53,572 bases of DNA from assembly GCF_001194135.2 (NCBI RefSeq), contig NC_068984.1, positions 1,247,789-1,301,360 on the forward strand. Reading direction: 5' to 3'. Numbering within the stretch: position 1 is the stretch's first letter; the number at the start of each line of letters is the position of its first letter. Positions 1-49,533 of the stretch are shown here, in pieces. The position numbers and the translations under genes were made by a program. This stretch comes from Octopus bimaculoides. Its lineage: Eukaryota. The notes under the pieces were generated by a model, which did not search any database, had not been told where the DNA came from, and saw nothing but the letters and a program-made list of their open reading frames with translations.

Positions 1-343
1 CTATCCCAAGTTTCCTCATTGACCACTAGATAAGGGATCGGGGGACCCTGTCAAAGGCTTTCTCCATGTCAACGAAAGCCAGGTACAGAGGTTTATCCTT
101 AGCTAGGTATTTCTCCTGCAACTGTCTCACTAGGAATAAGGCATCAGTAGTGCTTTTACCTGGCACGAACCCAAACTGCATCTCATCTAAATTGATTCGC
201 TCCCTAATTAGTTGGGCTATGACCCTCTCTGTAACTTTCATAACCTGATCTAACAGCTTGATGCCTCTGTAATTATTTGTATCTAAAGCATCCCCTTTAC
301 CTTTGTAGCAGTTGACTATGATGCTGCTACACCAGTCATAGGG
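1..343 (-). mobile_element. RTE-type LINE reverse transcriptase fragment (N-terminal RT motifs), runs off the window edge
   Basis: Encodes YKGKGDALDTNNYRGIKLLDQVMK...QFGFVPGKSTTDALF...AFVDMEKAFDRVP, with a stop just before WSMRKLGI. Confidence 0.92.
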
Positions 344-384
<41 letters not shown>

Positions 385-474
385 CCCTCTCTACTTTTAG
401 GCACAAGGCCTGGAATTTGTGGTGAGGGGACTAAGAAGATTACATTGACCCCAGTGTTCAACTGGTACTTATTT

Positions 475-1852
475 CATCATCGTTTAACGTCCGCTTTCCA
501 TGCTAGCATGGGTTGAACAGTTTGACTAAGGACTGGTGAACCAGATGGCTGCACCAGGCTCCAATCCGATCTGGCAATGTTTCTACAGCTGGGTGCCCTT
601 CCTAATGCCAACCACTCTGAGAGTGTAGTGGGTGCTTTTTACGTGCTGTTGGCACAAGGATCCAGTCAGGTGATTCTGGCAACAAACCATGCATGAATGG
701 TGCTTATTGCATGCCACCAGCATGGGAGCCAGTCAGGCAGCACTGGCATTGGCCACAGCTACAATTTCCATTTGATTGTGATTTGATTTGATTTTGATTT
801 ACTTGACTCAATAAGTCTCCTCAAGCACGGAATGTCACCCAACGATTCAAAGGTACCTTTTAAATGGGCTGGTTACGTGACACTGATTTAGGCTATGGCT
901 GTGATCTCACCCTCCTTGCCGGGTCTTCTCAATCAAAGCATATCTCGGTCTTTTGCCATTGCCTCTGTGAGGCCCAACATTCAGAGGTCATGCTTCATGT
1001 CTTCCTGGGTTTCCCTCTTCCACGGGGTCCATCCACTGTTAAGGAGTGACATTTCTTCACACAGCTCTTCTCATCCATATGCAACACATGACCATACCAG
1101 CACAGTCATCTCTTGCACGCCACATCTGACGCATGTCTTCAGCAGTCATGGTCCATGTTTTACTGCTGTGTAGCATGACAGTTTGCACACATGCATCATA
1201 CAATCTACCTTTCACGCTGAGCAAGAGGCCCTTTGTCACCAATAGGGGTAGAAGCTTTCTGAACTTTGCCCAGGCTATTCTTATTCTAGTGGCAATGCTC
1301 TCTGAGCATCTACCCCAATTACAGACTTGGCCACTTAGGTAGCAGAAGTTATCAACTACTTCTATTTTCTCCCTTCTGGTATGTGATGGAATCAGTCTTC
1401 TGAGCATCTGTGGTGTTTATTGCCCCTGTGCATCTGCACACAAAAGCTATCTTCCTGATTAACCTTCTTTTGATGTTGCTGCACCTCTTATGTGTCCATA
1501 GCTTACACTGGGTACATCTTATGGGGTTTCTACCTACACCTTTTCTACAGATTGAGCAGGGCCATCTACCTGAAGGGGTTTGTGATGTGTTCGCCTTCCT
1601 ACTTACTAGGACTTTGGATTTTGGAACATTGACTCTAAGGCCCTCCAATTCTAAACCTTGCTTCCACATCAGCATAGAGGAGCTCCCAGGGGCAGCCTGT
1701 CTTGAATTCTTCTGTTATTGCCTGAAGGACTTTGATGAATAAGAGGGAGCTGAGGGTTGATCCTTGGTGAATCCCTACTTCTACCCGGAAGTCTTTGCTA
1801 TACTCATTGTTAACCCTTACCTTACTAATGGCATCTACAGCTCTATACAGTT
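475..1852 (-). mobile_element. 5'-truncated RTE-type LINE: RT C-terminal half, 3' UTR and (GAT)n tail
   Basis: Disrupted frames give VGIHQGSTLS...TGCPWELLYAD, WPCSICRKGVG and GRLYDACVQTVMLHSSKTW. The 3' end has the CCATGCTAGCATGG hairpin and an ATG-type tail at 475. Confidence 0.9.
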
Positions 1853-1854
1853 CA

Positions 1855-1978
1855 TTAACCCCAAAAGGATGAAAGGCAAAGTCAACCTCAGCAGGATTTG
1901 AACTCAGAACATAAAGACAGATGAAAGATCACTAAGCATTTCGTCCAGCATGCTAACGATTCTGCCAGCTTGCCACCC
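1855..1978 (-). mobile_element. tRNA-derived SINE family A, 5' part
   Basis: Reverse complement shows A-box TGGCAGAATCGT, B-box GAGTTCAAATCC and the core GTTGACTTTGCCTTTCATCC shared with other copies. Confidence 0.85.
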
Positions 1979-2870: not shown

Positions 2871-3915
2871 TTAATAACATCAACAACAACAACAATAATG
2901 TTTATTTATTTAGTGACCTATTCACTGATTTGCTAACTTGGCAGGAATATAACTGACCGAATCAACACTATTATATAACTGGTACTTAATTCTGAAGAGA
3001 TGATGGGCGAAAGGATGAAAATAATTCAAAGACTTTAGTGTGGCACTTCTACCATTTCTGTCACTGTTTTCATGGCTACAACACCAACTACTACTACTAC
3101 TACTACCATTGCTGTTGTTAGAATTACTTAAAACTCTCCAATAAGAACTCAAAGACAATTGAGATGGCTATGCAACAATTATTGATGCTATTCTCTGAGT
3201 ACATTATAACTCTTACAATATATTTCTAATCAAATAAACTGGCTACATGCTGAAATTAAATTTGAAAATACTCAAGATTTAGTCAAATAATTAACTTTTC
3301 CATTATTAATCAGGTGTTTGGAGAATAATTTAACAAAGATGTTCTTGCACAAAATTATAATGGGAAGTTTTAATTTAAATAGAAATAATTTTATGGGAAA
3401 TTTTTTTTTTCTTTTATCATAAAAAAAGATGGTGTTGAGCAGGTTGGTGCCAAAAGAATTAAGTATTGCAAATATTGTGAATTTATGTATGTGTAGGTGT
3501 GTGTGTGTGTGTGCTCTTCATCACCTGTGCATCATACTAAATGTATACACACCATTTAAAGGCATGATGCTGTAGAATTGTCTGTGATAAAATTCCTTCA
3601 TAGACTTTCATTGCTAAAAGCACAACATATATCAAAGCCAGACAAACATCATTGTTGCATTGAATCATGAGAACAACAGAGGCATTTTTGTTCTTCTTGA
3701 GGCTTGTCAATGCCGTGCACTCGATTGTCGTCTGCTTCAATGAATTTCATGCTTCAATATATGTAGGATATATTCTGCTGGCAATAGTTTCATCACCCTA
3801 TGTCAACTAGCAACGGTGAAATTTAATCAGTTGATTTAAAATGAAGGAAAAAACATTTAAGAAATGACATTCCATCCAACAGCGCTTTCCACAAGACTCA
3901 TGGAACATACAAAGT

Positions 3916-4345
3916 GGCGAACTGGCAGAAACGTTAGCACACTGGGCGAAATGCTTAGCGGTATTTCATCTGTCTTTACGTTCTGAGTTCAAGTTCCGCC
4001 AAAGTCGACTTTGCATTTCGCCTTTTCGGGGTTGATAAATTAAGTAACAGTTACGCACTGGAGTCAATGTAATCAACTTAACCTCTTTGTCTGTCCTTGT
4101 TTGTCCCCTCTATGTTTAGCCCCTTGTGGGCAATAAAGAAATAAGAAACGTTAGCACACTGGGAGAAATGTTTAGTGATATTTCATCTGTCTTTATGTTC
4201 TGAGTTCAAATTCCGCCGAAGTCGACTTTGCATTTTGTCTTTTCAGGGTCAATAAATTAAGTACCAGTTGCGTACTGGGAACGATCTAATTGACTGGCTT
4301 TCTCCCCCAAAATTTCAGGCCTTGTGCCTAGACTAGAAAAGAATA
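3916..4345 (+). mobile_element. Two tandem copies of tRNA SINE family A (about 3916-4145 and 4146-4345)
   Basis: GGCGAACTGGCAGAAACGTTAGCAC head, B-box GAGTTCAA(G/A)TTCC and core GTCGACTTTGC; the two copies end in different 3' tails. Confidence 0.9.
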
Positions 4346-5215
4346 TATGTAGGATATAATGAATAAAGAATTCACTGGTATTACAGAAGCTTGCCAGACA
4401 GTAGAAAAAAAATCTCTAAGTTGATAGCACTGAGAAGCCTCAAGGAATACGAAATGCATCTGTTGTTCTTGGTGAGGCATTGAAGCAATGATGTTCATCC
4501 CACTCCCACATATATATTGCGTTTTTTGGCAGAACGAGTCCATGAAGAGATTTTTATCTCAAGCAATTCCACAGCATCATTCCCTTTAATAGTGTGTATA
4601 CGTTTAGTATGATACACAGATGGCAATTTCATTTTATGTGGTTTCAATTGCATACACCAAATATAAACCCCCAGTAACTTCACTAGTACTTATTTTAGTG
4701 ACCCCATAAGGATGACCAGCAAAACTGACCTCAGCAGTATTTGAGTGAGTCAGAAGAAATGCTGCTAAGCCCTTTGTCCAATGTGCCAAAGATTCTGCCA
4801 GCTTGTGGACTTCTTTTATGGTTGAAACAATGCAAGACAAAAAAGGAAGTAAAGAGTGTGTGTCTGATGCAGGAAGAGAAAATGGGAAATGAAGAATTTT
4901 AAATATCATCATTAGCCATTGATGAAGGAAAGAAGAGCTGTGGGGTGTAGGGGGAGGAGGATATCAGAATAGAAAGAAGAAAGGATAGTGAGAAAGGAAG
5001 TTGAGAGAAGGAGACAGATAAAGCAGGAGGACAAAGAATTAGGGATTGAGAAAGGGGTGGGGTGGATAGCAAGAATAGTGTCACAAATGAAAGGAAAAAT
5101 TCCTCAATTGTTTCATCTGATCTATTGATTTCTCATTTGGTATCTTGTCCTCTGATTTACATAATGACACACATAAAACCCTCTTCCCCCACCACTATTG
5201 TTAACTTGCCATGAC

Positions 5216-7879: not shown

Positions 7880-8572
7880 AGTATTCATAAGATGCAATAC
7901 AATTCCTGTTACATTGGGTTAAACGCTCTCTGCCAATAGGTCACAGTGAACTGCTGCTTACCCTGGACTGTTGACAGTTCTTTCTTGCAAAAACAATATA
8001 CAATATCATTCAGAAAAAAAAACTGTCCTGGAATAAATACAGAGAATCCCCACTATTATTGGATATATACACAAATATCAGCACAAGGAATATTGGTCAA
8101 GTGTGAATATAACAGGTTGGATATTGTTGTTTGGGAAAGAGGAGGAAAAGTATGAACTGCCTTAGATGTCAGATGCCCAACTCATGTAAATATCTCTTTG
8201 AAAATGAAAGAGAAAGAGGACAACTATGGACAACTGTTTCAAAACCTCCAGTTTCTGTATCATCATCATCATCATCATCGTCGTTTAACATCTGCTTTCC
8301 ATGCTAGCATGGGTTGGATGATTTGACTGAGAACTGGCAAGCCAGAAGGCTGCACCAGGCTCCAATCTGATTTGGCAGTCCAGATTATAAATTCACATTT
8401 AAACCAATAATGATTGTTGTGCTTGGTTTTGTGAGCAAATGCCTCAGTGACAATCTGGATAAGCTTGGATCTTCAGGAAAAGGAAATCAGCCAACTAACT
8501 CACACATTACAAATACAATTTGTAAGTGGAACAGTAAATATATGCAAGACTTTTCTCAGGTTTAAAATGTGA
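7880..8572 (+). mobile_element. Degraded 3' end of a restriction-like-endonuclease LINE, split by an insertion at 8261-8379
   Basis: NRLDIVVWERGGKV*TALDVRCPTHVNISLKMKEKEDNYGQLFQNLQFLY / PDYKFTFKPIMIVVLGFVSKCLSDNLDKLG / LQIQFVSGTVNICKTFLRFKM*. Confidence 0.78.
8261..8379 (-). mobile_element. Short RTE 3'-tail insertion
   Basis: (CAT)n followed by GTTTAACATCTGCTTTCCATGCTAGCATGGGTTGG..., the same family as the 3' end at 475. Similar copies in both orientations occur near 6300, 7005, 10640, 11725, 12215, 13075, 14030, 15420, 15510, 16520, 17700, 18455, 20090, 20931, 23640, 31620, 33980, 37740, 44910, 50550 and 51023. Confidence 0.9.
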
Positions 8573-12708: not shown

Positions 12709-14337
12709 CTGAAACACAAAAAAATTCAAAAAAAGACGTTTTTAACTTATTTGTTTGTTTATTCTTTTATTTAGAAAATCAATTTTCTGATGGCTGTCTG
12801 CGATTATTTGTACAGGTGTGAAGTTGGAGGTTTTAAAATCAGAAAAATAGATACTATGAAAGCCAAGTCATTTCTTTCACAAGGACATTAACATCAAACA
12901 AGAAATGGGTTTATGACACTATACAGAGACAAGCAAGACATCAAAGCGATTCCAAGTTCAATCCCAGTGGGTGCCATTGGGGTCAAGGGTTTCTATCATA
13001 AAAACCCTATCAAGTTGAAGAAAACCTTGGCAGTGAAATTTGGTTGACAAAGTATACAGAAGCCTGTCAACCTCTCTAGTGCTGGCACCACAAGAAAATG
13101 CAGCCATACCACTCTGTAAAGTGGTTGGTGATAGGAAGGGCATCTGGTCATAGGAACTATGCCAAAACAGACATGTAAAAGTCCCAGTCTATGAGAATAG
13201 TGGCTCTCAAAAGGAACTGACTTGGACTGTAAGTTCTTACTTCAGGATAAAGGAACATAGGTTTTGTGGTTAGAGTGTTAAGCTTACAATCCTAAGATTG
13301 CAGGTTCAATTCCTCGACTGGTAATATGTTGTATCCTTGATGAAGACAATGTTATGATAAGGTAAGATCCTTAAGACGTGGTGGTGGCGAGAACTGAAGA
13401 ACTAAGTGGTGTGGCCAGTAGGATAAAGATAAAATGGTGGAATTGTGATGAAGGAGTCGTTTCTGTAGATTTTCCACAAACATAACCAATAACAGAAAGT
13501 GACCTCACTGTGGCTGGATGGTAGGGACAGAAATTGGTCAGGAAAATACACTGTAACCTCCAAGACTGCACAGACTCTTGTGGTAATATGTCAGGAGTAA
13601 AAAATTAGGTGGGAGGAAATAGAGGAAGGATTGGACTGAGTGGTTTGTGAAGTGGGACAGAGCAGAAGAGATGAGTACTTGAGGTTGGCTTAGGAGGTGT
13701 TAATTCTGAGCAACAGAGGTCATTGTAGTAGATATAGAACAGGCAGTGAGAGGACACAGTGTGTGGGGAGTAAGAGATTCTGCTGAGAGATACTTTGTTG
13801 GTCTTCAGTCACATGACCTTCATTAGTAACCAAAATGATGATGAAGAAACTTGAAAATGAGGAGGAAGATTGCAAATATCAATGAAAGACTGAAAGATCT
13901 GGATGGAGTTATGGGAAAAAAAAAGAGAAAATCATTAATCCACTATTAATCCATTATGGATAACAGAAGATTACAGAATGGCCAATGAAAGGTGGAAACT
14001 AAAGATGTTAATAAAAGGTTCAGACTGATCGTCGTCTTCATTTAGCGTCCGTTTTTCCATGCTGAAATGGAGTGGATGGTTTGACCAGAGCTGGTAAAGG
14101 CCAGGGGCAGCACCAGGCTCCATTGCCTATTCTGGCTTGGTTTCCACAGCTGGAACGCCCTTCCTAACATCAGCCACTCTACAGACTGTATTGGATGCTT
14201 TTTTGTATGGCACCAGCACCAGTGCATTCTATGTGACATCAACAGACGAAGATAACATGTGTGTAATATTGATATAGTGAAGAGTGGGGGGAGGGTACTA
14301 TACTGGGGGGAGAGGAAGGGAAGAAGGCTTAGGAAGT

Positions 14338-14980: not shown

Positions 14981-16479
14981 TGATGGACTTCAATAGTGAT
15001 GTTGGATAGATTAAAGAGTTTATTCATCAAAAATGGATCATCCCAATAATAGTAAATTAGTCAAGTAGCAAGAAGCTGAAGCTAATACAGACCCTTACAA
15101 CTTACAACCTTCTTCAATGCCACATCTCATAAACTTTCTCCTCAGTGTCACATCTCAACACAACAAAATGATTTCCTAACAGAAATATTTTATTGTTTTT
15201 CATTTATTGTTGTTTGATGTTTATTGATTCTCTAAATGGTTTTTTTGTCAAAGTAAGCTTTTGCATGTCGTCAGAGCAAGTACGTTGTTCAAGATGAAAC
15301 AGCCATCCTGTTGTTAATCATTCCATTTTGAAGCAACAAGGTTGGGTTTATTTATTTTGCAATTACATAAACTATGAAGCAAAGAGTGAAATGTGCTTTT
15401 GTTTTGAACACACCTGAAGCTGGAATTATGATCATCGTCATTTAATATCCATGTTCCATGCTGACGTGGGTTGAATGGTTTGATGGGATCAAATGGCTCC
15501 AGGGGCTGCATTCATCATCATTATCATCGTTTAACGTCCGTTTTCCATGCTAGCATGAGTTGGATGGTTTGACTGAGGTCTGGAGAGCCAGAAGGCTGCA
15601 CCAGGCTCCAATCTGATCTGGCAGTGTTTCTACAGCTGGTTACCCTTCCTAACGCCAACCACTCCAAGAGTGTAGTGGGTGCTAGACTACAAACCCCAAG
15701 AGAGGCAACTTTATGTTAGGAAATAAGGCATTAAAGTATAAAAGAAGGGGCCAAAGCAGAACAAGTTTCTTGCTGTAGAGAGGCTACATGGCTTCTAAGA
15801 TTTTGAAGGGAGGGTAGGGATGATCAGGGTGGAGGAGGGATGAGATAAAAATCGTAGGGATGAGGTGTCTGGGTGAAACCTCATGAGACAGGTGGAGTAG
15901 AAATGAATAAGTGGAGACAAAGAGAACTGCAAGTGTAAGTGGGTAGAGGTTAGAAGAGTAGTGAATATGGGAGGGTGAGAGATGGGGAATGGGTGAAAGG
16001 TATGAGTATAAAGAATGAAGAACAGGCATTTAGTGGATGATGAATAAAGAATGTAGGGAAGAGTAGGTGACAATTGTAAAGATTGGGCTGGGCTGAGGAG
16101 TGGATGTAGTAGTGAATAGTAGATGAGGGGTAGGGGGAACTAATGAGGCACAGTTATTAAATAAAGAAACAAAAAAAAGAGACTGATGATGCTGATGGCT
16201 ATTTGTGTTGGCAAAATAAATAATGGAGTGAAGTTGTTGAATTAGGATCAATTTGAGGGTTGTATGAAGAAAGGGAACTTAAGCAAAGATGAAGAGAGAG
16301 AAATAAAACACCCAAGTCTTAGGCTTGCTGTAAAAAACTTACAAAAACTTTACTCTGTAGTTCAACACCAGACATTACAGCTCCACAACTACACAAGCTT
16401 TTCCTTAAATAATCTATAATCTATATATTTGTTTTGCAAGTTCCCTGATGTGAAATTGTGTGTGTGTGTGTGTGTGTGC

Positions 16480-17693: not shown

Positions 17694-18649
17694 GTTATCA
17701 GCATCATCCTTTAACACGTCTGTTCCATGTTAGCATGGGTAGAGAGATTAAGAAGGGGATCCAATAGGTCTGAGGACTACGTCCTGCTTACCATCAGCTT
17801 TGGAATGGTTTCTATGGCTGGATGACCCTCCAAAAGCCAACCACTTTCATTACAGAGTGGACTGGGTGCTTTTTTGTCTTTTATGATGCCAGCACTAGTG
17901 GGGTCAGCATGCAACTTGCAAGACTAAGATCCTGTTTGACTGAATGGGTTCGCAGCAGAGAGGGAGGTGGGTTTCTGCTGGAACAGAATTATGGAAGGAA
18001 ACAGGTTTCTTGCTGTATAGAAGAGAAGGAGAGAGAGTGAGTGGGGTGGAGCTGGAAAGAGGTGAAATAATGAGTGATGAGGTGTCAGAGTGGGCAGTGA
18101 AGGTATGAGGTGAGTAAAAGTGATGGGGAGAGGAGAACAGGGGGAGTTGGTAGAAAGAGGGTGGTTGTAAGTGAATGGGAGGGAGTATGTGTATGTACAC
18201 ACACACACACACACACACACACCATTGCTCTGATCTCATCTTCTCTAACTCATTCTCGTTTCCCTTCCAACCAGAGTAGCCATGTCTCTGCAGCAAGACC
18301 CCTGTCTCTGTCCTTCTGCACCTTTAATCTCTCAACTAGCACAAAGCAACCCCCACCCTGCCATACTTCTCCCCACTTCCAATTGAGAGGGTGTTTGCCT
18401 TTTTTCTTGCAAACCACTTGGTGACTCTGTTGGTGCCGCTGCTACATAAAAAACTCCCTTTCTACACTCTGTAAAGTGGTTGGCATTAAGAAGGGCAACT
18501 AGCCATGGAAATCACGCCAAAACGGACAATTGAAGCCTGGTGCAGCTCCCAGTCTTTGCCAGCGCCTGTCAAACCATCCAACCCATGCCAGCATAGAAAA
18601 CAGAGCATAAATGACAATAATGAATGGTGATGATGATGATGGTGTGTGT

Positions 18650-19986: not shown

Positions 19987-20900
19987 CTGAAAATAGAAGA
20001 GAGAGAGATAAAGAAGTAAACAGGAATTACTGGTACATAGTGTTGATGTGCAGAGGTTTTGGCATGACTTACTAATAACTGAGAGTTCCTCATCATTATT
20101 CAACACCCGTTTCTGGTGCTGGCATCCGTTGTATGGCTGGCGTAGGCTGGACAGCTGCTCCTGGCTCCGATTGTCCATTTTGACACAGTTCCTATGGCTG
20201 GACGCCCTTCCTAATGCCAACCACTTTACAGAGTGTGCAGGGGTGTTCTTTTACATGGCACCAGCACCAGTGGGATTGCAAAACAAAGACCTTTCAGCTG
20301 AGAGGAGGGAGTGGAAGGGAAGGAGGTGGCTGTGTGCCAAGTGAAAGGTTAGAGTATAATAGAAGGGAGTGTAAGAATTGTTTGGAGGTACCTAATATAT
20401 GCACACATAAAATAAGCCATTATGTTATGGAAACATTAGAAAGAAAGAAAACCAATATAATAAAAACAAAACCCTATTCAGGATTATAAGAAAAAAATGG
20501 AAGTTCATTATTTGTTTTAATTTACTTAAATCGAATTCCAATAGTTTGTGTAAAGCATTTACTTAAACTTCTTAAAAGTCTATTTAGATGCATGAACACA
20601 TCTTTAAGTGCATTCTTGTTGATGGTTTATCAGATTAAATTTTGAGGTAAAAATTTGGCATATTTCCTCAATAAAAATTCACAATGTTTGCTTCCTCTGC
20701 AGTTTAGCTCTACTAATTATTTCCCAGCTAATTGTGCATTCTCTATTATCTTTTAGCAACCAAATTAATTTATTTAAGTAAATTTTCACTAACTCGAGTT
20801 TCACCAATATTCGTTGTGGCTAGCCAGCATTGAGAACCAATCTAAGAGTTAACACGGTAACTGCCAGGATTATATATCCATCAAAACCATTTTTGGATAC

Positions 20901-21299: not shown

Positions 21300-21984
21300 A
21301 TGTAGACAATTAGACCCAACTGAGTGAAGAAATCCACTCTTGAGCTATTCAGACATGTACTTTATATTAAATATACGGTCCATAATATATTTACAAAGGT
21401 CAGATTCCGAGGCAGGTGAATAAAATATGAGTAACAATAGGGGTGTAGATGTTAATCCATTACAGCCATTTCTAACGAGTCCTTTAATTGATTAATGGAA
21501 ACATTACATCATTGCAAAGAAACCGTTTACATCAGATGAATTCATGAACTTCAAAATAAAGGACATTCAAAATGATTTAACAGAGTTTATAATCCAAGGA
21601 ACAAAGAAATTTACAGTGATTCTGCTACTATTTCAGTTGACAGAATGGATTTACCAGAGTAGTGTATATATATGATTAGAAAAGAGAAATTTAGAAGTTT
21701 TTAGGATGGAGAAAAAATAATTGACTGCCGTGACCCAATTATCTTTACTTCTAACAAAGGAGGAGAGCGTGGCTAAATTAGTTTAGGTTTATTTATTAAG
21801 GAATTGTTTAATGTCTACTGGTCAGTGGTAAGAAAATGGTTTGTGGCCAGGTCAACCTATTAAATTATCAAAGTAACTGATAATTTTGTAGTGTGAACAT
21901 ACCTACACACAAGCAGGCATAGGTACGGACTTTGATCATTGTTAGTTTTACTGAGTACAAAATACTTTGTTGATAAGGTATGAT

Positions 21985-24894: not shown

Positions 24895-26162
24895 GGTCAC
24901 AAGAGATGTCCTATATAAAGTCGCAAGAGATGTCCTATGTAAGGTCACAAGAGATGTCCTATATAAGATCGCAAGAGATGTCCTATATAAAGCCACAAGA
25001 GATGTCCTAATATAAGGTCGCAAGAGATGTCCTATATAAGGTCGCAAGAGATGTCCTATATAAGGTCGCAAAGAGATGTCCTATGTAAGGTCACAAGAGA
25101 TGTCCTATATAAGATCGCAAGAGATGTCCTATATAAAGCCACAAGAGATGTNNNNNNNNNNNNNNNNNNNNNNNNNNNNNNNNNNNNNNNNNNNNNNNNN
25201 NNNNNNNNNNNNNNNNNNNNNNNNNNNNNNNNNNNNNNNNNNNNNNNNNNNNNNNNNNNNNNNNNNNNNNNNNNNNNNNNNNNNNNNNNNNNNNNNNNNN
25301 NNNNNNNNNNNNNNNNNNNNNNNNNNNNNNNNNNNNNNNNNNNNNNNNNNNNNNNNNNNNNNNNNNNNNNNNNNNNNNNNNNNNNNNNNNNNNNNNNNNN
25401 NNNNNNNNNNNNNNNNNNNNNNNNNNNNNNNNNNNNNNNNNNNNNNNNNNNNNNNNNNNNNNNNNNNNNNNNNNNNNNNNNNNNNNNNNNNNNNNNNNNN
25501 NNNNNNNNNNNNNNNNNNNNNNNNNNNNNNNNNNNNNNNNNNNNNNNNNNNNNNNNNNNNNNNNNNNNNNNNNNNNNNNNNNNNNNNNNNNNNNNNNNNN
25601 NNNNNNNNNNNNNNNNNNNNNNNNNNNNNNNNNNNNNNNNNNNNNNNNNNNNNNNNNNNNNNNNNNNNNNNNNNNNNNNNNNNNNNNNNNNNNNNNNNNN
25701 NNNNNNNNNNNNNNNNAAGATCGCAAGAGATGTCCTATATAAGATCGCAAGAGATGTCCTATATAAGGTCGCAAGAGATGTCCTATATAAGGTCGCAAGA
25801 GATGTCCTATATAAGGTCGCAAGAGATGTCCTATATAAGGTCGCAAGAGATGTCCTATATAAAGCCACAAGAGATGTCCTACATAAGTTTGCAAGAGATG
25901 TCCTATATAAGGTCGCAAAGTGATGTCCTATATAAGATCGCAAGAGATGTCCTATATATAGCCACAAGAGATGTCTTATGTAAGGTCGCAAGAGATGTCC
26001 TATATAAGGTTGCAAGAGATGTCCTATATAAGGTCGCAAGAGATGTCCTATATAAGGTCGCAAGAGATGTCCTATATAAGGTTGCAAGAGATGTCCTATA
26101 TGAGGTCACAAGAGATGTCTTATGTAAGGTCGCAAGAGATGTCTTATGTAAGGTCGCAAGAG
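24895..26162. repeat. 24-bp minisatellite, unit GCAAGAGATGTCCTATATAAGGTC, with a gap (N 25152-25716)
   Basis: Unit read directly; it translates as (YKVARDVL)n. Decayed relics occur near 26180 and 26800-26930. Confidence 0.97.
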
Positions 26163-27039
26163 ATATATATATATAATTTCAAAAGATGTCATAAGATTAT
26201 GAAATGTTTCTACTCAAAATTACCCAAAGTAAGACTAATCAGCCACTTCCCAGTAAAGGGTTAGACAAAAGGAGAAAGTGGCCTTAATGTTCTTAAAACA
26301 ATGTACATGCATTTTTAAGAAAGCAAATAAAAGACGTCTAATATAATACTTGATAAAAGATTTAAAATGAAATACAGTGAGAAGGCAATAAAAAAAAAAA
26401 CCTGATGATTATAAAATATGTAATATGACATGACAGTAAAGTAGCCAATAAAACAAGGTGGTAATAAAAGAATGATAACGGAACTGAAAGCAATAGAATC
26501 TGTTCTTTGAGATGCTAAATAAATGATATAAAGAACTAATAAAAATATTAAAAGGAAAGAAAATAGCAGAGATTAAGCAAGGTACTTTGCTAACCCAGAA
26601 TTTAAAGAGATTAAGATTATATTCTACAGGAAAATAATGGAGAGAGAAAGAGTGAGAGAGTTATTTCACAATTCAGCTGTTCTGAGAGAGAAAATGGTTT
26701 GGGCATGAAACTTGCAGTGTGTCTATGAGATATCAAAGAAGCACAGATGTGATTTGTTGAATTTGATAAACCAAATTTAGATGAGAAAACTGTCGTATAT
26801 AAATCACAAGAAATGCCATATAAAAGTGACATTGTATGTCACAAAAGATCTCAAGAGGAGTCATATACATCACAAGGAGATGTCATATCTACATAGGTCA
26901 TAAGAGATGGTCATATGTAAACAGTGCAGCACTCATTATATTAGCATGCAGGTGACTGAGTATTCTACAGACATGAGTATTCTTAATGTGATACTTAGCA
27001 TAACACAGTATGTGACAAGATTGCAGTTGGAGTCCATCC

Positions 27040-36226: not shown

Positions 36227-37475
36227 CTGCAGGAAAAAGAAAATAGAAACATTTGAAGGAAATTCAGCAGATTGGAATAAAAGAAAATAAGATTTAGAAG
36301 GGAAAAAGACATTGTAAGGGAAAGAATTCAGTTATTAATATTTCAGTGGGAATTTCTCATCTTGTAATCACTTCAATGGAACTAAATCCATTGGGGGGAT
36401 GGGGGAGGGGGGTCTTAAGGGTCCCCTTATGGAACTCATTCACATAATATATTCCACCAACCACTCTCGTTCTATGGTCCTGGATCAGCTCTGACTGGAG
36501 AGAGACATATAATCAAAGACATTCCATCCATGACTGTCCCTTTTCTCAACCATTGTCTTTCTCGGACTACATTTTTCAATGTATTCCACACTTTTCCAAA
36601 AAGTGCTATAATATGCAGCAGATTTTTCTCATAACAACTCAGGTTTTATTATACGGAATATACATCTTATCTTAGAAATTGAATTCCACAAAGAAAGACA
36701 ACAAAGCATTGTTGGCAAAACAAGTGTCCCCTGGTGTTCATGAGTTCAAACTAAGCTCAGGATACTTTTATCTGATTGGTTCATCTTAGCTTCACAACTA
36801 AAAGAGAATGGCTCAACCACATCACAGCTGAGAGGCTGACAATAGCAATGGTATTTTGCTGGAATTTCATCCATAAATATCAACATTTACAGAGCTATCA
36901 CACCCATAGAGTATAGGCCAATATGTGGTGTTTGCCAGCCAGTTTAACCCCAACACTGACCCCTAACTTTGTTGTAAACATTTGAAACGGAGTCTGTCAT
37001 CTGTGAACAGCTCCCTCCCCTCCTCCCATCAAGATCCTCTCTGACTGAGTGGGGCTGCAGGAGAGAGGAAGGCAGTTTTATGGTAAGGGATGGAGGGAAT
37101 TAAAGGGTGAGAAAGAAGGGGCTAGAACAGAACATAATATGTTGTCTCTAACCGTCCGTAGCCATCACTTGCAAGCGAGTATGACCTGGGAGCTTGTACT
37201 ATCCTCTTGTTAATTGGTTTAGATGCTTGTCATAAACAGTCACAAATATTCTCTCAGCCTCCATCCCTTTGATCCAACAGAACATCCAAGAGGGGATGAG
37301 TAGATGAGGGCCAAGAGGATGTTAATGTCTGTTTGCAACTACACAAAAGGCATCTTAAGCAACTAGCAAAAGCATGATAATATGCTAGCAGCTGATACTC
37401 ACTTACAAGTGATGGCTGAGCAAGCTTTATGCAGCGTGTGTGTGAGTGAGTGAGTGAGTGAGTGAGAGAGAGAGA

Positions 37476-37521
<46 letters not shown>

Positions 37522-37563
37522 GAAGCTTTAGCACCAAATACATACACATCATCTGTTACTTAC

Positions 37564-37664
37564 TTGTAGATACTGTTCAAATTGTTCCTTTTTACTCTCC
37601 ATGAAATCTTGGTTTTTGGTACCAAAAGATTTCTTTGGCGGTAACTGACATGCAGAGAAGCCAC
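37564..37664 (-). CDS. SNX14: SNX14 coding exon, PX proline-rich loop
   Basis: ctgcag| acceptor, |gtaagt donor, 101 nt, phase 1 to 0. Encodes (G)GFSACQLPPKKSFGTKNQDFMESKKEQFEQYLQ (human [33 protein letters not shown]). Confidence 0.96.
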
Positions 37665-38086
37665 CTGCAGATTTAGAAAACAGATATAAATATCAACATT
37701 ACAATAAATAGCATCATCATCACCACTATCACCACCATTTTATGTCAGCTTTCCCTGCTGTTAAGAGTCACGCAGGTCATCAGAATTACTGCCCCTCTAA
37801 AGGAATTTGGGAGACAAAATCTCATTCAGACATTCTTTTCTTATGTGATTTCTATGACTGGATGCCTTTCCTAACCCCAACAACTTTACTGGATTATACT
37901 TTTGTGGCACCAGCACATGAGGGGCTGCGGTGTCCCCAGCAGGTCAAGAGAAAAGGGTTTTCTCATTGAGTATAAGGTGCAGTTTATTATGGCACCAACA
38001 CTGCTGACAAAAGGTGCTGACTGCCCTACATTTACAGTAAGATGACCAACAGAATGAGTAAAAGAGAAAGCAATTGTGATGGCAGT

Positions 38087-40255: not shown

Positions 40256-41039
40256 TCTGTACCAGAAGACTTGCTACATGGCAGTGAAACATGGGTCGTG
40301 ACAGCCAAGGACATGTGTAGGCTTGGAAGAAATGAAGCCAGTATGTTTCATTGGATGTGTAATGTCAGTGTGCATGTATGACAGAGTGTAAATGTCTTGA
40401 GAGAACAGTTGGGCATAAAAAGCATCAGATGTGGTGTGCAAGAGAGACAACTGTGTTGGTATGGTCATGTGATGCGTATGGACGAGGACAGCTGTGTAAA
40501 GAAGTACTGATCTCTGTGGAGGGGAACCCATGGTAGAGGTAGGCCCAGAAAGACATGGGACGAAGTGGTGAAGCGTGATCTTCGAACTTTGAGCCTCAGA
40601 GGCAATGACTAGTAACCGATACTTTTGGCAATGTGCTGTGCTTGAGAGGACCCATCAAGCCAAGTGCACTCGTGCTGGTGACATGTAATGAACACCTTTT
40701 GAGCATTGGGCCTCATGGAGGCAAAGTGGCCTATCTCCTTTCAAGTGTTGGACCTCACGGAGGCAATGACCAAGACCTTTGGCATTACGTCATGCTTGAG
40801 AAGAAGACCCATCAAGCCAAGCAAAATCGCAGTCATGGCAGACACAGGTGTCATGCTGGCGGCACGTAAAAGACACCCATTACACTCTCAGAGTGGTTGG
40901 CATTAGGAAGGGCATCCAGCCATAGAGATCATGCCAAATCAGACTGGAGTCTGGTGCAGCCTCCCAGTGTACCATCCCAGTCAAACCATCCAACCCATGC
41001 CAGCATGGACAATGGACATTAAGCGATGATGATGATGAT
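40256..41039 (+). mobile_element. 5'-truncated RTE LINE 3' end with UTR and (GAT)n tail
   Basis: LLHGSETWVVTAKDMCRLGRNEASMFHWMCNVSVHV...YGHVMRMDED...GRGRPRKTWDEVVK, then the UTR ending ACATTAAGCGATGATGATGATG. Confidence 0.92.
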
Positions 41040-41148
41040 AATGATATAACCCTAACTCCCCTCAGGAAATTTGAACTCAAAACCTTTACACACAAGACTT
41101 TCACAACATTCTCATTCACAAGGACAAAGTCTATATTCAATGACTTAC

Positions 41149-41198
41149 CATGGAACTCAGTCAGTCTTTGTTCTAGAACATAAAACTCTTGATAGCGC
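41149..41198 (-). CDS. SNX14: SNX14 coding exon, PX RRY motif
   Basis: ttttgcag| acceptor, |gtaagt donor, 50 nt. Encodes (R)RYQEFYVLEQRLTEFH(G), nearly identical to human RRYLEFYVLESKLTEFHG. Confidence 0.97.
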
Positions 41199-41780
41199 CT
41201 GCAAAAGAGTTGCAAGATGTAAGAGAGAATGAAACAACAAACACAACCTTTAAATTGGTTCTTCCAGAACACAATTTCAGAAATGCTGCTTAAACATAAA
41301 AGACACATCAACAGCCATTTTTAAAAGAAATGAAGAAAATTAGAATTAAAACTAAAATAAGTTGATAAACTTTGTGAAATTTAATTCTATTCTTTTAAAA
41401 TTCTTTTATTTCACACAAATCTAAGATATTTCAAGGCTAAGTCTTTGCAAAAATAAAGAAAAAAAGATTATTTAAATGAGTGGCTGATAATAATTGATCT
41501 TAACCAGAAAACAGAGTTAAGGGAAAATAAAATGGAAATTCATAATTTCAATCCATTTTAGAAAAGTTTTCAAAGAATAAATGAAACTTCCACAACTTCA
41601 TTCTCTAAGAACTTCCTGCAGCATTTTGAGTTCCATATAAAAGTGATAAAGAATTAAAAAAACAGCCAAACCAAATGCATGACCTGTTACTACCCTCTTT
41701 TAAAAAAGTTTTTGTTTTAATAAACATTGTATTAAGATTTTCTTTTAATAAATGATTCTGAATATAATGAAAGCACATAC

Positions 41781-41814: not shown

Positions 41815-43010
41815 CTGGAAATTAAAATAGCAATTTACTAATTACTTGTGGATTCAAAGTAGTTTTATTAATTATCTTTCACTTGTTTCAGTCATTATAC
41901 TGTGGCCATGCTGGGGCATCACCTTGAAGAATTATAGTCAAATGAATCAACCCCAAGACTGTTTTTTTTTTTTTAACCGTGGCACTTATTCTATCAGTCT
42001 CTTAGGCCAAACTGCTAAGTTACAGGGACATAAACACACCAGCAACTGTTATCAAGCAGGGGTGGGGGGACAAACACAGACATAAAGACACACACAGAAA
42101 TATATATATACGACGGGCTTCTTTCAGTTTCCATCTACTAAATCCAATCATAAGGCTTTGGTGGGCCTAAGGCTATAGTAGAAGACATTTGCACAAGGTA
42201 CCATACAGTGGGATTGAACCCAGAATCATGTGTGCATTAAGTTCATATAGCATATTTACATTACATTTTGTACAATACAGAAATTTCCTTTTCTAAATAT
42301 ATTTCAGAGACACAAACCACACAACCACACACATAGATAGATAGATTTTAGAAACATTTAGATATTACATATGATATGTGTGAGAAATAAAAGATTTCCA
42401 TATGATGTCTAAATATTTGCCTGAGAAGACACTTTTGGTGAAATCTCTCCAATGTTTGGATGTGCCATTGATAGAGACTTCATGTCTTGGATGAGTGTGG
42501 TAGGCAGGGCCAGCTCAAGGTACCGGCAACTCTGGCAGTTGCCCAGGGAACCATGAGCTAGGAGGCACCAAGGAGGGCATGACGAAGACAGGGAAATTTC
42601 AACAACCATCAGCTTGCACCTGCCAAAGTTCAGCTTGCCTGGGGTACCGGCAAACCTGGTGGCAAGGATGGAATGATGTTAGCGTTAAAAACGCAAACCT
42701 TAGCGGACAATTGTAAATCCCTGTTTGCATATACACAACTTTTATTGTAAATGTATTCTTTTATTAAATGATGTTCAAATATATTTTGTCTCAGTTTTTA
42801 GAGTAAATGTTTGTAAGATATCCAAATATTACTGGAGATATTCAGAAGACTTCAAGAGAAGTCTTCTGAATATCTCAAAATAACACTTTAATATAAATAA
42901 TTGGGATTCAGATGAATCAGGTACTTAAGTTGAAACACCAAAAATTAGTGCGGTATTATTTGTACACTTTCAAAATAAGGTGAATAAAATCAAAATAAGC
43001 AACAGGATAT

Positions 43011-43575
43011 CCAGAGGTGATGTAGTACGACCGTTTCAAGCAGCTCCATTTAATTGAACAATGCAATCATTACATCAATTTAAATGCAGAGCAATCCTCA
43101 ACTGCATAAATAAACAGAATTTTTTTAATCGGTTGGAGACATTTGTATAATTTTACTTAAATCCTCTAATAGGGTAGGAAGATAGACAAAGTCCATGCTG
43201 TTGTCAGTGACAACAACATGGACTTTGTCTGTCTGTCTTCTTATCCTCTTAGAGGATAAAGACAAAAAACAGTTTATGTTGTCAGGGTCTGGTCATCCTC
43301 CAATGCATGGAATGATAATTCTCCATGTCTTCCCCTATTAGGGGATTTACGTTATTAGAGGACTTAGTCGTCTTACCCTATTAGAGGATGCACTCTGTCT
43401 GTCTTCTTATCCTATTAGAGGATTTTTTTAATCAGTCAGACACATTTGTTTGACGGATTAAAAAAATTCTATTTATTTATGCAGCTGAGGATAGCCCTGC
43501 ATTTAAATTGATGTAATGATTGCATTGTTCAATTAAATGGAACCACTTGAAACGGTCGTACAGCATCACCTGTGG
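43011..43575. mobile_element. Fold-back / MITE-like element with about 180-bp imperfect inverted arms and an internal copy of SNX14 exon sequence
   Basis: The left arm CCAGAGGTGATGTAGTACGACCGTTTCAAG...TTTAAATGCAG matches the reverse complement of the right arm ending CGTACAGCATCACCTGTGG. No clear TSD. Confidence 0.85.
43259..43328 (-). pseudogene. Duplicated, inactivated fragment of the SNX14 PX-start exon (source 43688-43761)
   Basis: 70 nt vs 74 nt, with one 4-nt deletion and four transitions; codon CGG has become TGA. Confidence 0.93.
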
Positions 43576-43649
43576 CTTTAATATAAATATTTTAAAACAT
43601 TTTATTTATTTCCAATTTAATTAAAATTAATTTGCAAAAGTCAACTGAC

Positions 43650-43848
43650 CTTCTGATGAAACATCAACTCTATGAACATCAATGATGAAGACAAAAAACA
43701 GTTTCTTTATGTTGTCAGGGTCTGGCCGTCCTCCAATGCGTGGAATGGTAATTCTCCATGTACTCAAGTCATGGAGAGGACATTCCCAATTTGATGACCA
43801 ATCATAAAAGTTTTCATATGAAATTTCATCTTCAAGAGAACTACAAGA
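43650..43848 (-). CDS. SNX14: SNX14 coding exon, start of PX domain
   Basis: tttttctcag| acceptor, |gtcagt donor, 199 nt, phase 0 to 1. Encodes SCSSLEDE...LHDLSTWRITIPRIGGRPDPDNIKKLFFVFIIDVHRVDVSSE (human NLAAWKISIP...VFCIDVERND). Confidence 0.95.
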
Positions 43849-49082: not shown

Positions 49083-49223
49083 TACATTATTTACATTTGA
49101 TGGATATTTGTCCTCATCTTCTTGTTTGTTGTTAACACATTTCGGCTGATATACCCTCTAGCCTTCATCAGGTATCTTAGGGAAATTTCAAACCTGGGTT
49201 CTCATTCCTAAGGCATTTTTCGA

Positions 49224-49261
<38 letters not shown>

Positions 49262-49272
49262 TCACTGCCTGG
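49083..49272 (-). mobile_element. 5'-truncated copy of the tRNA-head / hammerhead-tail element
   Basis: Reverse complement reads TCCAGGCAGTGACCTGAA(TAA)n...GAATGAGAACCCAGG...CCTGATGAAGGCTAGAGGGTATATCAGCCGAAATGTGTTAAC. Confidence 0.88.
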
Positions 49273-49283
49273 ACATATGCCCA

Positions 49284-49533
49284 TGGGCATATGGCATAGT
49301 AGTTAAGAGCACAGGCTACTAACCCCAAGCTTCCGAGTTCAATTCCAAGCAGTGACCTGAATAATAACAACAACAACAACAATATCAAAAAAATCTTAGG
49401 AATGAGAACCCAGATTCGAAATTTCCCCAAGACACCTGATGAAGGCTGGAGGGTATATCAGCCGAAACTTTGTGTTAACAACAAACAAGATGAGGACAAA
49501 TATCCGTCAATTGCAAATAATGTAAATAATGTC
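49284..49533 (+). mobile_element. SINE-like element: tRNA-derived Pol III head, (CAA)n linker and Penelope-like tail
   Basis: A-box TGGCATAGTAG (49292-49302), B-box GAGTTCAATTCC (49335-49346); the tail contains a hammerhead core. Confidence 0.8.
49431..49476 (+). ncRNA. Minimal type I hammerhead ribozyme motif (this copy probably degenerate)
   Basis: Stem I GACAC/GTGTT, core CTGATGA, extra A, stem II GGCTG/CAGCC, GAAAC, then TTT where CGT-H is expected. Confidence 0.7.

What the first reader, a model, noticed from the sequence alone, without database searches (positions are those of the whole stretch)
43011..43575. Fold-back element that has captured a piece of the adjacent SNX14 exon
Seen: about 180-bp inverted arms enclose 43259-43328, a same-orientation copy of 43688-43761 from the PX-start exon, whose boundary lies only 74 nt beyond the element. 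The copy differs by a 4-nt deletion and four transitions (two at CpG), and one codon has become TGA, so it is the decaying derivative. Junctions show microhomology (GAT[G/A]AAGAC on the left, TGT on the right). Established: gene-fragment capture is known for Pack-MULEs, CACTA elements and Helitrons, and templated insertions arise in microhomology-mediated repair. Inference: this may be an early stage of exon capture, with donor and capturing element still side by side. In the pre-mRNA the exon copy would sit in the loop of a long dsRNA stem next to a 5' splice site. The copy is sense, so it cannot itself pair with the exon.
Basis: partly seen in the sequence, partly recalled or inferred. Interest (0 to 1): 0.8.

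Follow-up and report, generated by a model that had tools for sequence, protein, structure and literature searches.

The report
Exon snippet copied into intronic fold-back
A 74-base piece of a sorting-nexin-14 exon was copied by an error of DNA repair or replication into the core of a hairpin-forming inverted repeat 430 bases away in the next intron. It is now a decaying, non-coding scar of a kind already catalogued in animal genomes.

Summary
Arms of about 190 nt (43011-43199 and 43385-43575, 84% complementary) enclose 43255-43328. That stretch is a same-orientation copy of exon bases 43684-43761, differing by five transitions and a 4-nt deletion and carrying a TGA. The gene lies on the minus strand, and the exon (43650-43848) encodes the start of an SNX14-type PX domain. 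An outgroup contig shows the exon is the donor.

The piece replaces about 12 nt of one 34-nt unit in an irregular tandem array, with 3-nt microhomology (GAT, TGT) at each junction. The core around it is a mosaic of snap-back and slippage scars. This matches the single-copy "Pack-TIR" events that Tan et al. 2021 attribute to transposition-independent gap filling: nearby donor, microhomology, small internal gap.

I found no evidence that the fold-back is a mobile transposon.
- It has no 2-9 bp target-site duplication.
- The window holds no second fold-back copy.
- The one old relative (21401-21524) stays homologous at least 33 nt past the left arm's outer end.

Genome-wide copy number could not be tested with these tools. 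A 17-nt direct repeat flanking 42903-43575 is unexplained. Verdict: a new member of a known kind, of modest interest.

The parts
43011..43199 (.). Left arm of the fold-back. The outer 136 nt (43011-43146) are well conserved. The inner end (43161-43199) is one 34-nt unit in reverse orientation.
   Evidence: 191 columns, 84% complementary to 43385-43575; 29 mismatches (16 transitions, 13 transversions), K2P 0.17.
43385..43575 (.). Right arm of the fold-back, in register with the left arm. It holds its own small hairpin, 43419-43442 / 43447-43470.
   Evidence: 12 of the 29 arm mismatches cluster at 43131-43158, opposite this secondary hairpin (I5). That is the signature of a short-range template switch.
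43180..43234 (.). Near-perfect central palindrome with its centre at 43207 (27-nt arms, 93%, 1-nt spacer).
   Evidence: I3, I4.
43224..43257 (+). Unit U1 of the ~34-nt repeat (..TGTCTGTCTTCTTATCCTCTTAGAGGAT). It is the left border of the inserted exon piece, and its last three bases (GAT) are the left microhomology.
   Evidence: (D2, D3).
43255..43328 (-). Copy of exon bases 43684-43761, in the sense orientation of the minus-strand gene. It carries a frameshifting 4-nt deletion and an in-frame TGA, so it is non-coding.
   Evidence: E=2e-23. Against the outgroup, 3 changes are derived in the copy (all C>T on the sense strand, 2 of them at CpG) and 2 are synonymous changes derived in the exon.
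43326..43423 (+). Irregular array of units: U2' (5'-truncated, about 12 nt replaced by the exon piece; its first three bases TGT are the right microhomology), U3' (3' half only), U4 (joined to U3' through a shared GGA) and U5 (complete).
   Evidence: The unit motif occurs 6 times, all inside the element, against 0.09 expected by chance.
43684..43761 (-). Donor segment inside the exon. It encodes TWRITIPRIGGRPDPDNIKKLFFVFI, the start of the PX domain.
43650..43848 (-). SNX14-like exon (199 nt) that begins the PX domain. Its 5' splice site is at 43649/43650, 74 nt from the element.
42886..42902 (+). 17-mer CTTTAATATAAATAATT. It is a direct repeat (16/17) of 43576-43592, which directly abuts the right arm.
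   Evidence: (D8). It is the only match with 1 mismatch or fewer in the window. Even at 2 mismatches only 0.11 matches are expected in the whole window.
43576..43592 (+). Second copy of the 17-mer, directly after the right arm's end.
42903..43010 (+). 108-nt segment between the first 17-mer and the left arm. Its right third (42965-43010) is homologous, contiguously with the arm, to the relic at 21401-21524.
21401..21524 (+). Old, solitary relative of 42965-43096 (about 70% identity). It runs through the arm's outer boundary and has no inverted partner nearby.
   Evidence: Smith-Waterman (SW) score 25 against 17.1 +/- 1.5 for whole-window shuffles; nhmmer E=3.5e-4; exact 13-mer AGGTGAATAAAAT, colinear within 1 nt; no inverted partner.
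42835..42876 (.). Perfect 19-bp hairpin with a 4-nt loop, 135 nt left of the fold-back. It is the only non-simple perfect hairpin (stem >=12, loop <=12) in the whole window.
   Evidence: (I8).

Best explanation
The structure is an in-situ templated insertion (gap filling, or replication template switch) into the unstable core of an intronic inverted repeat. It is not a transposon caught in the act of exon capture.

The ~565-bp fold-back can extrude a hairpin or cruciform. Such structures stall forks and break. During repair or restart, a nascent plus-strand 3' end finishing a 34-nt unit (...AGAGGAT) paired through GAT with the exon 429 nt downstream. It copied 74 nt (AAAGAC...CCATGT), then returned through TGT to the next unit (TGT|CTTC...). 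About 12 nt of that unit were replaced.

The same core carries other scars of the same process:
- an irregular tandem array with microhomology joints;
- a second snap-back copy of the inner unit around 43207;
- a stretch of the right arm converted into its own hairpin.

Since then the copy has decayed neutrally, acquiring CpG transitions, a frameshift and a stop. It has no splice sites and lies in sense orientation, so it neither codes nor pairs with the exon. The fold-back is most likely an immobile inverted duplication of part of an older repeat, or a dead relic of one.

Shown: the anatomy, the donor polarity, the microhomologies, the absence of a target-site duplication (TSD), and the relic that crosses the arm boundary.
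Inferred: the break or fork-stall trigger, the order of events, and the immobility.
For: - Donor polarity. The exon is orthologous to a relative's exon and to human SNX14 PX. Three of the five differences are derived in the copy, and the two derived in the exon are synonymous.
- Junctions. There is 3-nt microhomology on each side, and only about 12 nt of a unit are replaced.
- Mosaic core. The unit motif occurs 6 times inside the element against 0.09 expected. The U3'/U4 joint shares GGA. There are secondary hairpins I3 and I5. 12 of the 29 arm mismatches cluster opposite I5.
- Hairpin potential. z=-25.8 as RNA and -24.6 as DNA.
- Against mobility. There is no TSD and no inverted similarity beyond the arm ends. 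The window holds no other fold-back copy. The relic is colinear at least 33 nt past the arm end, with an exact 13-mer.
- Local tendency. The only perfect non-simple hairpin in the window lies 135 nt away.
- Literature. Single-copy animal Pack-TIRs arise by transposition-independent gap filling, with cis bias, microhomology (median 2 bp), internal breakpoints and small gaps (PMC8277862).
- Dating. The ages are compatible: K2P is 0.07 for copy versus exon and 0.11-0.17 between the arms.
Against: - Genome-wide copy number of the arms is unknown. No eukaryotic genome collection was available, and the negative external searches are uninformative.
- The arm termini read CAGAGGTG / CACCTGTG, which from memory resembles hAT-type ends.
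- A second, unrelated fold-back of similar size and arm divergence lies in the same window (49084-49532). This could mean the genome hosts fold-back transposon families.
- The 17-nt direct repeat flanking 42903-43575 looks like a long target-site duplication. It would make the whole block an insertion from elsewhere, which this explanation does not account for.
- The relic evidence rests on one locus.
Confidence: 0.6

Rival explanations
1. The fold-back is a genuine non-autonomous TIR or Foldback-type transposon (MITE-like) of a multicopy family. It picked up the exon piece by gap repair after excision, or by fork switching, and could still carry it elsewhere. That would make it a true Pack-TIR in statu nascendi.
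For: - Long arms with inner tandem subrepeats are typical of fold-back elements and MITEs.
- The size is under 600 bp.
- The termini are hAT-like (CAGAGGTG; from memory, not tested).
- A diverged relative of the arm exists in the window.
- A second fold-back lies in the same window.
- Tan et al. describe one Foldback family (Ssk-FB4) that did amplify after capture (PMC8277862).
Against: - No TSD of 2-9 bp at the arm ends.
- The relative's homology continues at least 33 nt beyond the supposed terminus, and it has no inverted partner.
- The window holds no other copy.
- The donor lies 429 nt away, which points to capture in situ with no later movement.
- Only 1.4% of animal Pack-TIRs were multicopy.
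Confidence: 0.22
2. The whole 673-bp block 42903-43575 is one insertion bounded by a 17-nt target duplication. It could be a retroposed copy of an older repeat whose first-strand cDNA snapped back at 43207 and copied itself, or a multi-switch MMBIR event. In either case the inverted arm, the unit array and the exon piece were laid down in a single episode of serial template switching.
For: - A 16/17 direct repeat flanks exactly 42903-43575, the second copy abutting the arm end. About 0.11 matches are expected in the whole window even at 2 mismatches.
- The relic is colinear across the boundary between the 108-nt segment and the arm, as expected if segment plus left arm is the original unit and the right arm is its inverted copy.
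- The divergences of the arms (about 0.055-0.085 per lineage), the inner duplicates and the exon copy (3/74 derived) are statistically indistinguishable.
Against: - The 17-mer is AT-rich and was noticed post hoc.
- Neither end has a poly(A) or simple-repeat tail.
- The left 60 nt of the 108-nt segment show no significant similarity to the relic.
- The second fold-back at 49084-49532 has no such flanking repeat.
- No hammerhead or tRNA-like signal is found.
Confidence: 0.12
3. The hairpin is maintained for a function in the pre-mRNA, for example as a long intronic dsRNA that recruits ADAR to the neighbouring exon or that modulates use of the 5' splice site 74 nt away. The exon-derived loop would be incidental or a decoy.
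For: - The predicted RNA stem is very stable.
- It lies 74 nt downstream of a 5' splice site on the transcribed strand.
Against: - There is no sign of selection for pairing. The 16 transitions between the arms split 8:8 between those that keep G.U on the sense RNA and those that break it, and there are 13 transversions as well.
- The arms are decaying at roughly the neutral rate.
- The relative with an available contig (L001) has no such hairpin in the 370 nt after its exon.
- There is no Rfam match.
Confidence: 0.05
4. The structure is an assembly artefact: a chimeric join or collapsed repeat.
For: The window is a draft with five N runs.
Against: - The nearest N run is more than 7 kb away.
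- The exon copy differs from the donor by 5 substitutions plus an indel, and the arms differ at 29 sites. Artefactual duplications are normally identical.
Confidence: 0.02

Closest known systems
Single-copy Pack-TIRs of animals formed by transposition-independent gap filling (Tan et al. 2021, Nat Commun 12:4280, PMC8277862)
   Same: A host gene fragment sits between inverted arms. The parent sequence is on the same chromosome and very close (429 nt here; most of their cases within 5 kb). Microhomology is short at both breakpoints (3 nt here; their median 2 bp). The breakpoints are internal and the replaced gap is small (about 12 nt, roughly 2% of the element; their median 4.6%). The result is a single copy that is not coding.
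   Different: Their cases are defined by arms that match a catalogued TIR transposon consensus. Here the arms could not be assigned to any family, lack a TSD, and their homologue runs past the arm end. The recipient may therefore not be a transposon at all.
Foldback (FB) elements of Drosophila, including the Ssk-FB4 Pack-TIR family
   Same: Long inverted arms whose inner parts are built of short tandem units, with a foreign gene fragment between the arms.
   Different: FB elements are multicopy and make a 9-bp TSD (from memory). Ssk-FB4 is amplified, expressed and coding. Here there is no TSD, one tandem-unit copy in the left arm against 4-5 in the right, no evidence of amplification, and a dead copy.
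Filler DNA from abortive gap repair at Ac/Ds and P elements; Pack-MULE, Pack-CACTA and Helitron gene capture
   Same: Template switching during repair synthesis puts nearby host sequence inside an element. Microhomology is found at the joints.
   Different: Those systems depend on transposase-made breaks and often go on to transpose the chimera. Nothing here shows excision or later movement, and no MULE, CACTA or Helitron hallmarks were seen.
Short-range template-switch mutations, and fold-back or MMBIR/FoSTeS rearrangements (e.g. Walker et al. 2021, PMC7954356; PMC11724301)
   Same: There are local inverted copies that create or perfect hairpins, serial switches with microhomology, and templated insertions drawn from within a few hundred bases.
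   Different: The events described in those papers are mostly tens of bases or kilobase-to-megabase in size. Here a 190-nt inverted duplication and a 74-nt direct templated insertion sit together.

Membership tests
Pack-TIR (gene fragment inside a TIR transposon) | Internal sequence is derived from an identifiable parental host locus | tested here: met
   43255-43328 is a copy of exon bases 43684-43761, E=2e-23. Polarity is fixed by the outgroup.
Pack-TIR (gene fragment inside a TIR transposon) | Flanking arms match a known TIR transposon family or consensus | not testable with these tools
   No eukaryotic repeat library or genome was available. The ORF-based and DNA scans returned nothing relevant.
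Pack-TIR (gene fragment inside a TIR transposon) | Target-site duplication next to the TIR ends | tested here: not met
   The flanks AGGATATC / GCTTTAAT (and shifted registers) share no 2-9 bp repeat. The only flanking repeat is a 17-mer, whose left copy lies 108 nt outside the arm.
Pack-TIR, gap-filling subtype (transposition-independent) | Parent in cis and close, microhomology at the breakpoints, internal breakpoints with a small gap, single copy | tested here: met
   The distance is 429 nt. Microhomology is GAT and TGT. About 12 nt of one inner unit are replaced. The piece is single copy within the window; the genome-wide count was not tested.
MITE / Foldback transposon | Terminal inverted repeats, small size, no coding capacity | tested here: met
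   The arms are 190 nt and the element 565 bp. No stop-free stretch in the element exceeds 55 codons and no ORF with a start codon exceeds 48 aa, and none found a real homologue.
MITE / Foldback transposon | Many dispersed copies sharing the same termini | tested here: inconclusive
   One relic in 53.6 kb (21401-21524). It does not stop at the terminus but continues at least 33 nt beyond it, and it has no inverted partner. Genome-wide copy number is untested.
hAT superfamily (non-autonomous) | 8-bp TSD and short conserved termini (YARNG) | tested here: not met
   The termini CAGAG.. / CACAG.. fit YARNG, but the 8-bp flanks do not match (0-2 of 8).
Helitron / Helentron | 5'-TC ... CTRR-3' ends, a 3' subterminal hairpin, insertion into AT or TT without TSD | tested here: not met
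   There is no CTRR 10-12 nt after the hairpin 42835-42876 on either strand, and the element ends do not fit.
Retroposon (SINE, or LINE-mobilised) | Variable-length TSD of about 7-20 bp plus a 3' tail, with a tRNA/7SL/5S head or LINE-related tail | tested here: inconclusive
   A 17-nt TSD-like repeat is present. There is no A-rich or simple-repeat tail at either end and no tRNA or Rfam match.
hpRNA / endo-siRNA hairpin targeting its parent gene | The arms themselves are derived from the target gene, so the dsRNA contains gene sequence | tested here: not met
   The gene-derived piece is present once, in sense orientation, in the loop. The arms have no similarity to the gene's exons.

The most novel reading that the evidence does not exclude
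The 673-bp block 42903-43575, bounded by a 17-nt direct repeat, was created in one episode. A copy of an older repeat was inserted, by target-primed reverse transcription or break-induced synthesis. The nascent strand then snapped back at 43207 to copy itself as the right arm, stuttered through the 34-nt units, and made an excursion into the neighbouring exon. If this genome makes fold-backs this way as a rule (a second TSD-less fold-back lies at 49084-49532), it would be a transposase-independent route to 'MITE-like' hairpins that sample local exons.
Probability: 0.12. Interest if true: 0.5.

Novelty: new member of a known kind. Interest (0 to 1): 0.3.

Why it matters
The locus is a clean natural example, readable base by base, of how hairpin-prone DNA draws in nearby sequence. 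Donor, recipient, both microhomology joints and several companion template-switch scars all sit within 900 bp.

It shows that an inverted repeat holding a gene fragment need not be a transposon capture. This matters for annotation pipelines that call Pack-type elements from structure alone.

It does not create a new exon, a new gene or an antisense regulator. The copy lacks splice sites, is frameshifted and stopped, and lies in sense orientation.

The practical consequence for the gene is limited to a roughly 190-bp dsRNA stem 74 nt from a 5' splice site. Whether that stem is edited, diced or affects splicing is an open empirical question.

Tried and rejected
1. Other copies of the arms outside the window.
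- Exact 22-mer and 28-specified-base patterns in JGI metagenomes gave 0 hits.
- GTDB genomes gave two Bacteroidales MAG hits that are bare 22-mers in a bacterial gene, so chance.
- The core ORF against 1.84 billion representatives gave one spurious satellite ORF.
- None of these collections is known to hold this organism's genome, so these negatives say little.

2. Independent assemblies of the locus. Exact look-up of two ORFs in or next to the element found nothing on record.

3. Orthologous intron.
- The relative behind P0001 (L001-L003, 84% exon identity) has 370 nt of intron after the exon, but it is too diverged to align and has no hairpin.
- A closer relative (L006/L007, introns 72-80% identical) was found only for a different exon.

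4. Selection on the RNA stem. An apparent excess of G.U-preserving transitions in the outer arm (5 of 6) vanished over the whole arms (8:8), so this was rejected.

5. The 9-mer TGTTGTCAG, shared by the palindrome centre and the exon piece, as a possible invasion anchor. About 0.5 such matches are expected by chance, so this was rejected.

6. Extension of the inverted repeat beyond 43011/43575, and homology of the left 60 nt of 42903-43010 to the relic. Neither was significant.

7. More relics, searched with a 3-sequence profile: none found.

8. Rfam and tRNA scans gave nothing above threshold. The weak miRNA-model hits only reflect hairpin shape.

9. Identifying the organism from run accessions in the literature gave no hits. 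A SINE in the window reminds me of cephalopod repeats, but this is unverified and nothing rests on it.

Full report
**What is there**

The window is AT-rich (36% GC), full of microsatellites and dispersed repeats, and has five N runs, none within 7 kb of the finding. A gene on the minus strand has a 199-nt exon at 43650-43848. Its acceptor reads TTTTTCTCAG|TCT and its donor CAGAAG|GTCAGT. A Logan contig from a related species (L001, 84% identical over 218 aligned nt centred on the exon) has the same exon with the same boundaries. I joined this exon to two downstream exon candidates (in the stop-free stretches 40883-41320 and 37552-37692). The best solved-structure match of the joined peptide is the PX domain of human SNX14 (E=8e-16; the next best, nischarin, scores 8e-4), and Pfam PX scores 2.6e-9.

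**The observation**

- 43011-43199 and 43385-43575 are inverted copies: 191 columns, 83.8%, E=2.5e-54. The outer 136 nt are 88% complementary.
- The 591-nt stretch folds at -305.6 kcal/mol as RNA, against -125 +/- 7 for shuffles (z=-25.8). As DNA z=-24.6.
- Inside, 43255-43328 is a direct-orientation copy of 43684-43761 (E=2e-23), with a 4-nt deletion and five transitions.
- In the exon's frame the copy reads TWRIIIPCIGG* and is then frameshifted. The exon reads TWRITIPRIGGRPDPDNIKKLFFVFI.
- Against the outgroup, three differences are derived in the copy. All three are C>T on the sense strand, two at CpG, and one of them turns the ancestral CGA into TGA.
- The other two differences are derived in the exon and are synonymous: CGA>CGG and TTT>TTC. 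That base therefore belongs to the copied tract.
- The exon is the donor and the copy is decaying. The mutual divergence of the copies also argues against an assembly artefact.

**Anatomy of the core**

The inner end of the left arm is one copy, in reverse orientation, of a ~34-nt unit (..TGTCTGTCTTCTTATCCTATTAGAGGAT). The right half carries four to five copies in tandem. The motif occurs six times, all inside the element, against 0.09 expected.

The array is irregular:
- U1 (43224-43257) is complete.
- The exon piece follows.
- U2' (43326-43346) lacks its first ~12 nt.
- U3' is only a 3' half.
- U4 is joined to U3' through a shared GGA.
- U5 is complete and in register with the left arm.

A near-perfect palindrome is centred at 43207 (27-nt arms, 93%). 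In the right arm, 43419-43442 / 43447-43470 has become its own hairpin. 12 of the 29 arm mismatches cluster opposite it, at 43131-43158, as a short-range template switch would produce.

The exon piece is joined on the left through GAT (unit ...GAGGAT; ancestral exon ...AATGAT|AAAGAC). It is joined on the right through TGT (exon ...CCATGT; unit ...TCTGT|CTTC). That is 3 nt of microhomology on each side and a replaced gap of about 12 nt.

**Is the fold-back a transposon?**

- There is no target-site duplication of 2-9 bp at the arm ends in any register, and no inverted similarity beyond them.
- Within the window, the arms' exact 28-mer core occurs only in the two arms, even allowing 3 mismatches.
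- A sensitive search finds one old relative at 21401-21524. It scores SW 25 against 17.1 +/- 1.5 for whole-window shuffles, and nhmmer gives E=3.5e-4.
- That relative has no inverted partner. Its homology does not stop at the arm's outer end. It continues at least 33 nt to the left and includes an exact 13-mer (AGGTGAATAAAAT) colinear within 1 nt.
- A terminus at 43011 is therefore unlikely. The left arm plus its left flank looks like older contiguous sequence, and the right arm looks like its inverted copy.
- A profile built from both arms and the relic finds nothing more.
- Searches outside the window were negative or spurious. The collections searched are not known to contain this organism's genome, so the genome-wide copy number remains untested.

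**An unexplained feature**

The 17-mer CTTTAATATAAATA[A/T]TT occurs at 42886-42902 and again at 43576-43592, directly abutting the right arm. No other match with one mismatch or fewer exists in the window, and only 0.11 matches are expected even at two mismatches. It would bound a 673-bp block: a 108-nt segment plus the fold-back. That is what an insertion with a long target duplication would look like, for instance a retroposed repeat whose cDNA snapped back, or a multi-switch break-induced event. Neither end has a tail. The left 60 nt of the block show no homology to the relic. No RNA-family signal is found. I keep this reading as a minority rival.

**Dating**

The arms differ by K2P 0.14-0.17, or about 0.11 without the clustered template-switch patch. 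The copy differs from the exon by 0.07, with 3 of 74 sites derived on the copy's side. With such small counts the ages cannot be separated, so a single episode and successive events in the same period are both possible. Introns of the closer relative (L006/L007) are only 72-80% identical to the window. The structure is therefore probably younger than that split, and that species would be a good outgroup.

**Mechanism**

The best-supported reading is in-situ microhomology-mediated templated synthesis at a fragile, hairpin-forming site. A nascent end left one 34-nt unit, copied 74 nt from the exon 429 nt downstream on the same strand, and came back one unit further on. The irregular array, the central snap-back and the arm-internal hairpin are sister scars. 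The only perfect non-simple hairpin in the whole window (42835-42876) lies 135 nt away, which fits a locally error-prone context.

The steps shown are the junction sequences, the polarity and the mosaic structure. The trigger (fork stall or break) and the order of events are inferred.

**Comparison with what is known**

Tan et al. 2021 (PMC8277862) found 370 Pack-TIRs in 100 animal genomes, nearly all single-copy.
- 57% lie within 15 kb of the parent, most within 5 kb.
- Microhomology is found at 68% of cases, with a median of 2 bp.
- Breakpoints are internal and the gaps have a median of 4.6% of the element.

They attribute these to transposition-independent gap filling at fragile sites inside dead elements. 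The present case matches every one of those process features. A donor next to the recipient is thus the normal outcome, not an early stage.

What cannot be shown is the family criterion, namely arms that match a TIR transposon. One criterion that could be tested, the TSD, is not met. I therefore file it as working like a gap-filling Pack-TIR, with membership in a transposon family unproven and, on present evidence, somewhat unlikely.

**Function**

The copy lacks splice sites (it comes from the exon's interior), is frameshifted and stopped, and is in sense orientation in the loop. It cannot code, and it cannot form dsRNA with the exon.

The arms show no sign of selection for RNA pairing. Transitions that keep G.U on the sense strand and those that break it are 8:8, and there are 13 transversions as well.

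A ~190-bp stem 74 nt from a 5' splice site could still be an ADAR or Dicer substrate or affect splicing. That can only be tested with expression data.

**Verdict**

This is a new member of a known kind. Interest is modest (0.3): it is a tidy textbook example and a caution for structure-based "Pack" calls, not a new mechanism.

Noticed in passing
window 49084-49532: A second fold-back unrelated in sequence. Its arms are about 190 nt (49083-49273 / 49344-49532, 78-85% complementary) and their inner ends are microsatellites, (ATT)n opposite (AAC)n. The 70-nt loop holds a perfect 20-nt palindrome (CATATGCCCATGGGCATATG) and a tRNA-like-looking stretch. It has no TSD, no flanking direct repeat and no other copy in the window.
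   Followed up: partly
window 42835-42876: A perfect 19-bp stem with a 4-nt loop (GAGATATTCAGAAGACTTC aaga GAAGTCTTCTGAATATCTC). It is the only non-simple perfect hairpin with stem >=12 in the 53.6-kb window. It lies 10 nt before the 17-mer and 135 nt before the fold-back, and looks like a young snap-back duplication.
   Followed up: partly
window 42886-42902 and 43576-43592: A 17-nt direct repeat (16/17) bounds 42903-43575, the second copy abutting the right arm. It looks like a long target-site duplication, and its origin is unexplained.
   Followed up: partly
window 21401-21524: A solitary old relative (about 70% identity) of 42965-43096 in another intron of the same gene. It crosses the fold-back's arm boundary and has no inverted partner.
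   Followed up: yes
window 29-1928 (minus strand): Several stop-free stretches on the minus strand look by eye like a degraded non-LTR retrotransposon reverse transcriptase with a zinc-knuckle-like region. No family search was run on them.
   Followed up: no
window ~345-640, 2360-2880, 3910-4350, 8278-8472, 14030-14200, 15514-15715, 18430-18620, 20136-20270: Many copies, on both strands, of one dispersed SINE-like repeat 75-89% identical to one another, often ending in trinucleotide runs. Their translations share the motif ..WLALGR..RN.A.SDWSLVQPSG..Q..QPMLAWK.DVKR. From memory it resembles a cephalopod repeat, which is unverified.
   Followed up: no
window 24895-26193 (interrupted by N run 25152-25716): A tandem array with copies 87-97% identical and alignment offsets in multiples of about 24 nt, spanning an assembly gap. 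It looks like a minisatellite or satellite block inside the gene's intron.
   Followed up: no
L006/L007 (Logan SRR11869391, SRR11869394): Contigs from a related species. Their introns align to window 36636-37872 at 72-80%, and a downstream PX exon (LPPKKSFGTKNQDFMESKKEQFEQYLQ) is 100% identical in protein. This is the most useful outgroup found for the orthologous-intron test.
   Followed up: partly
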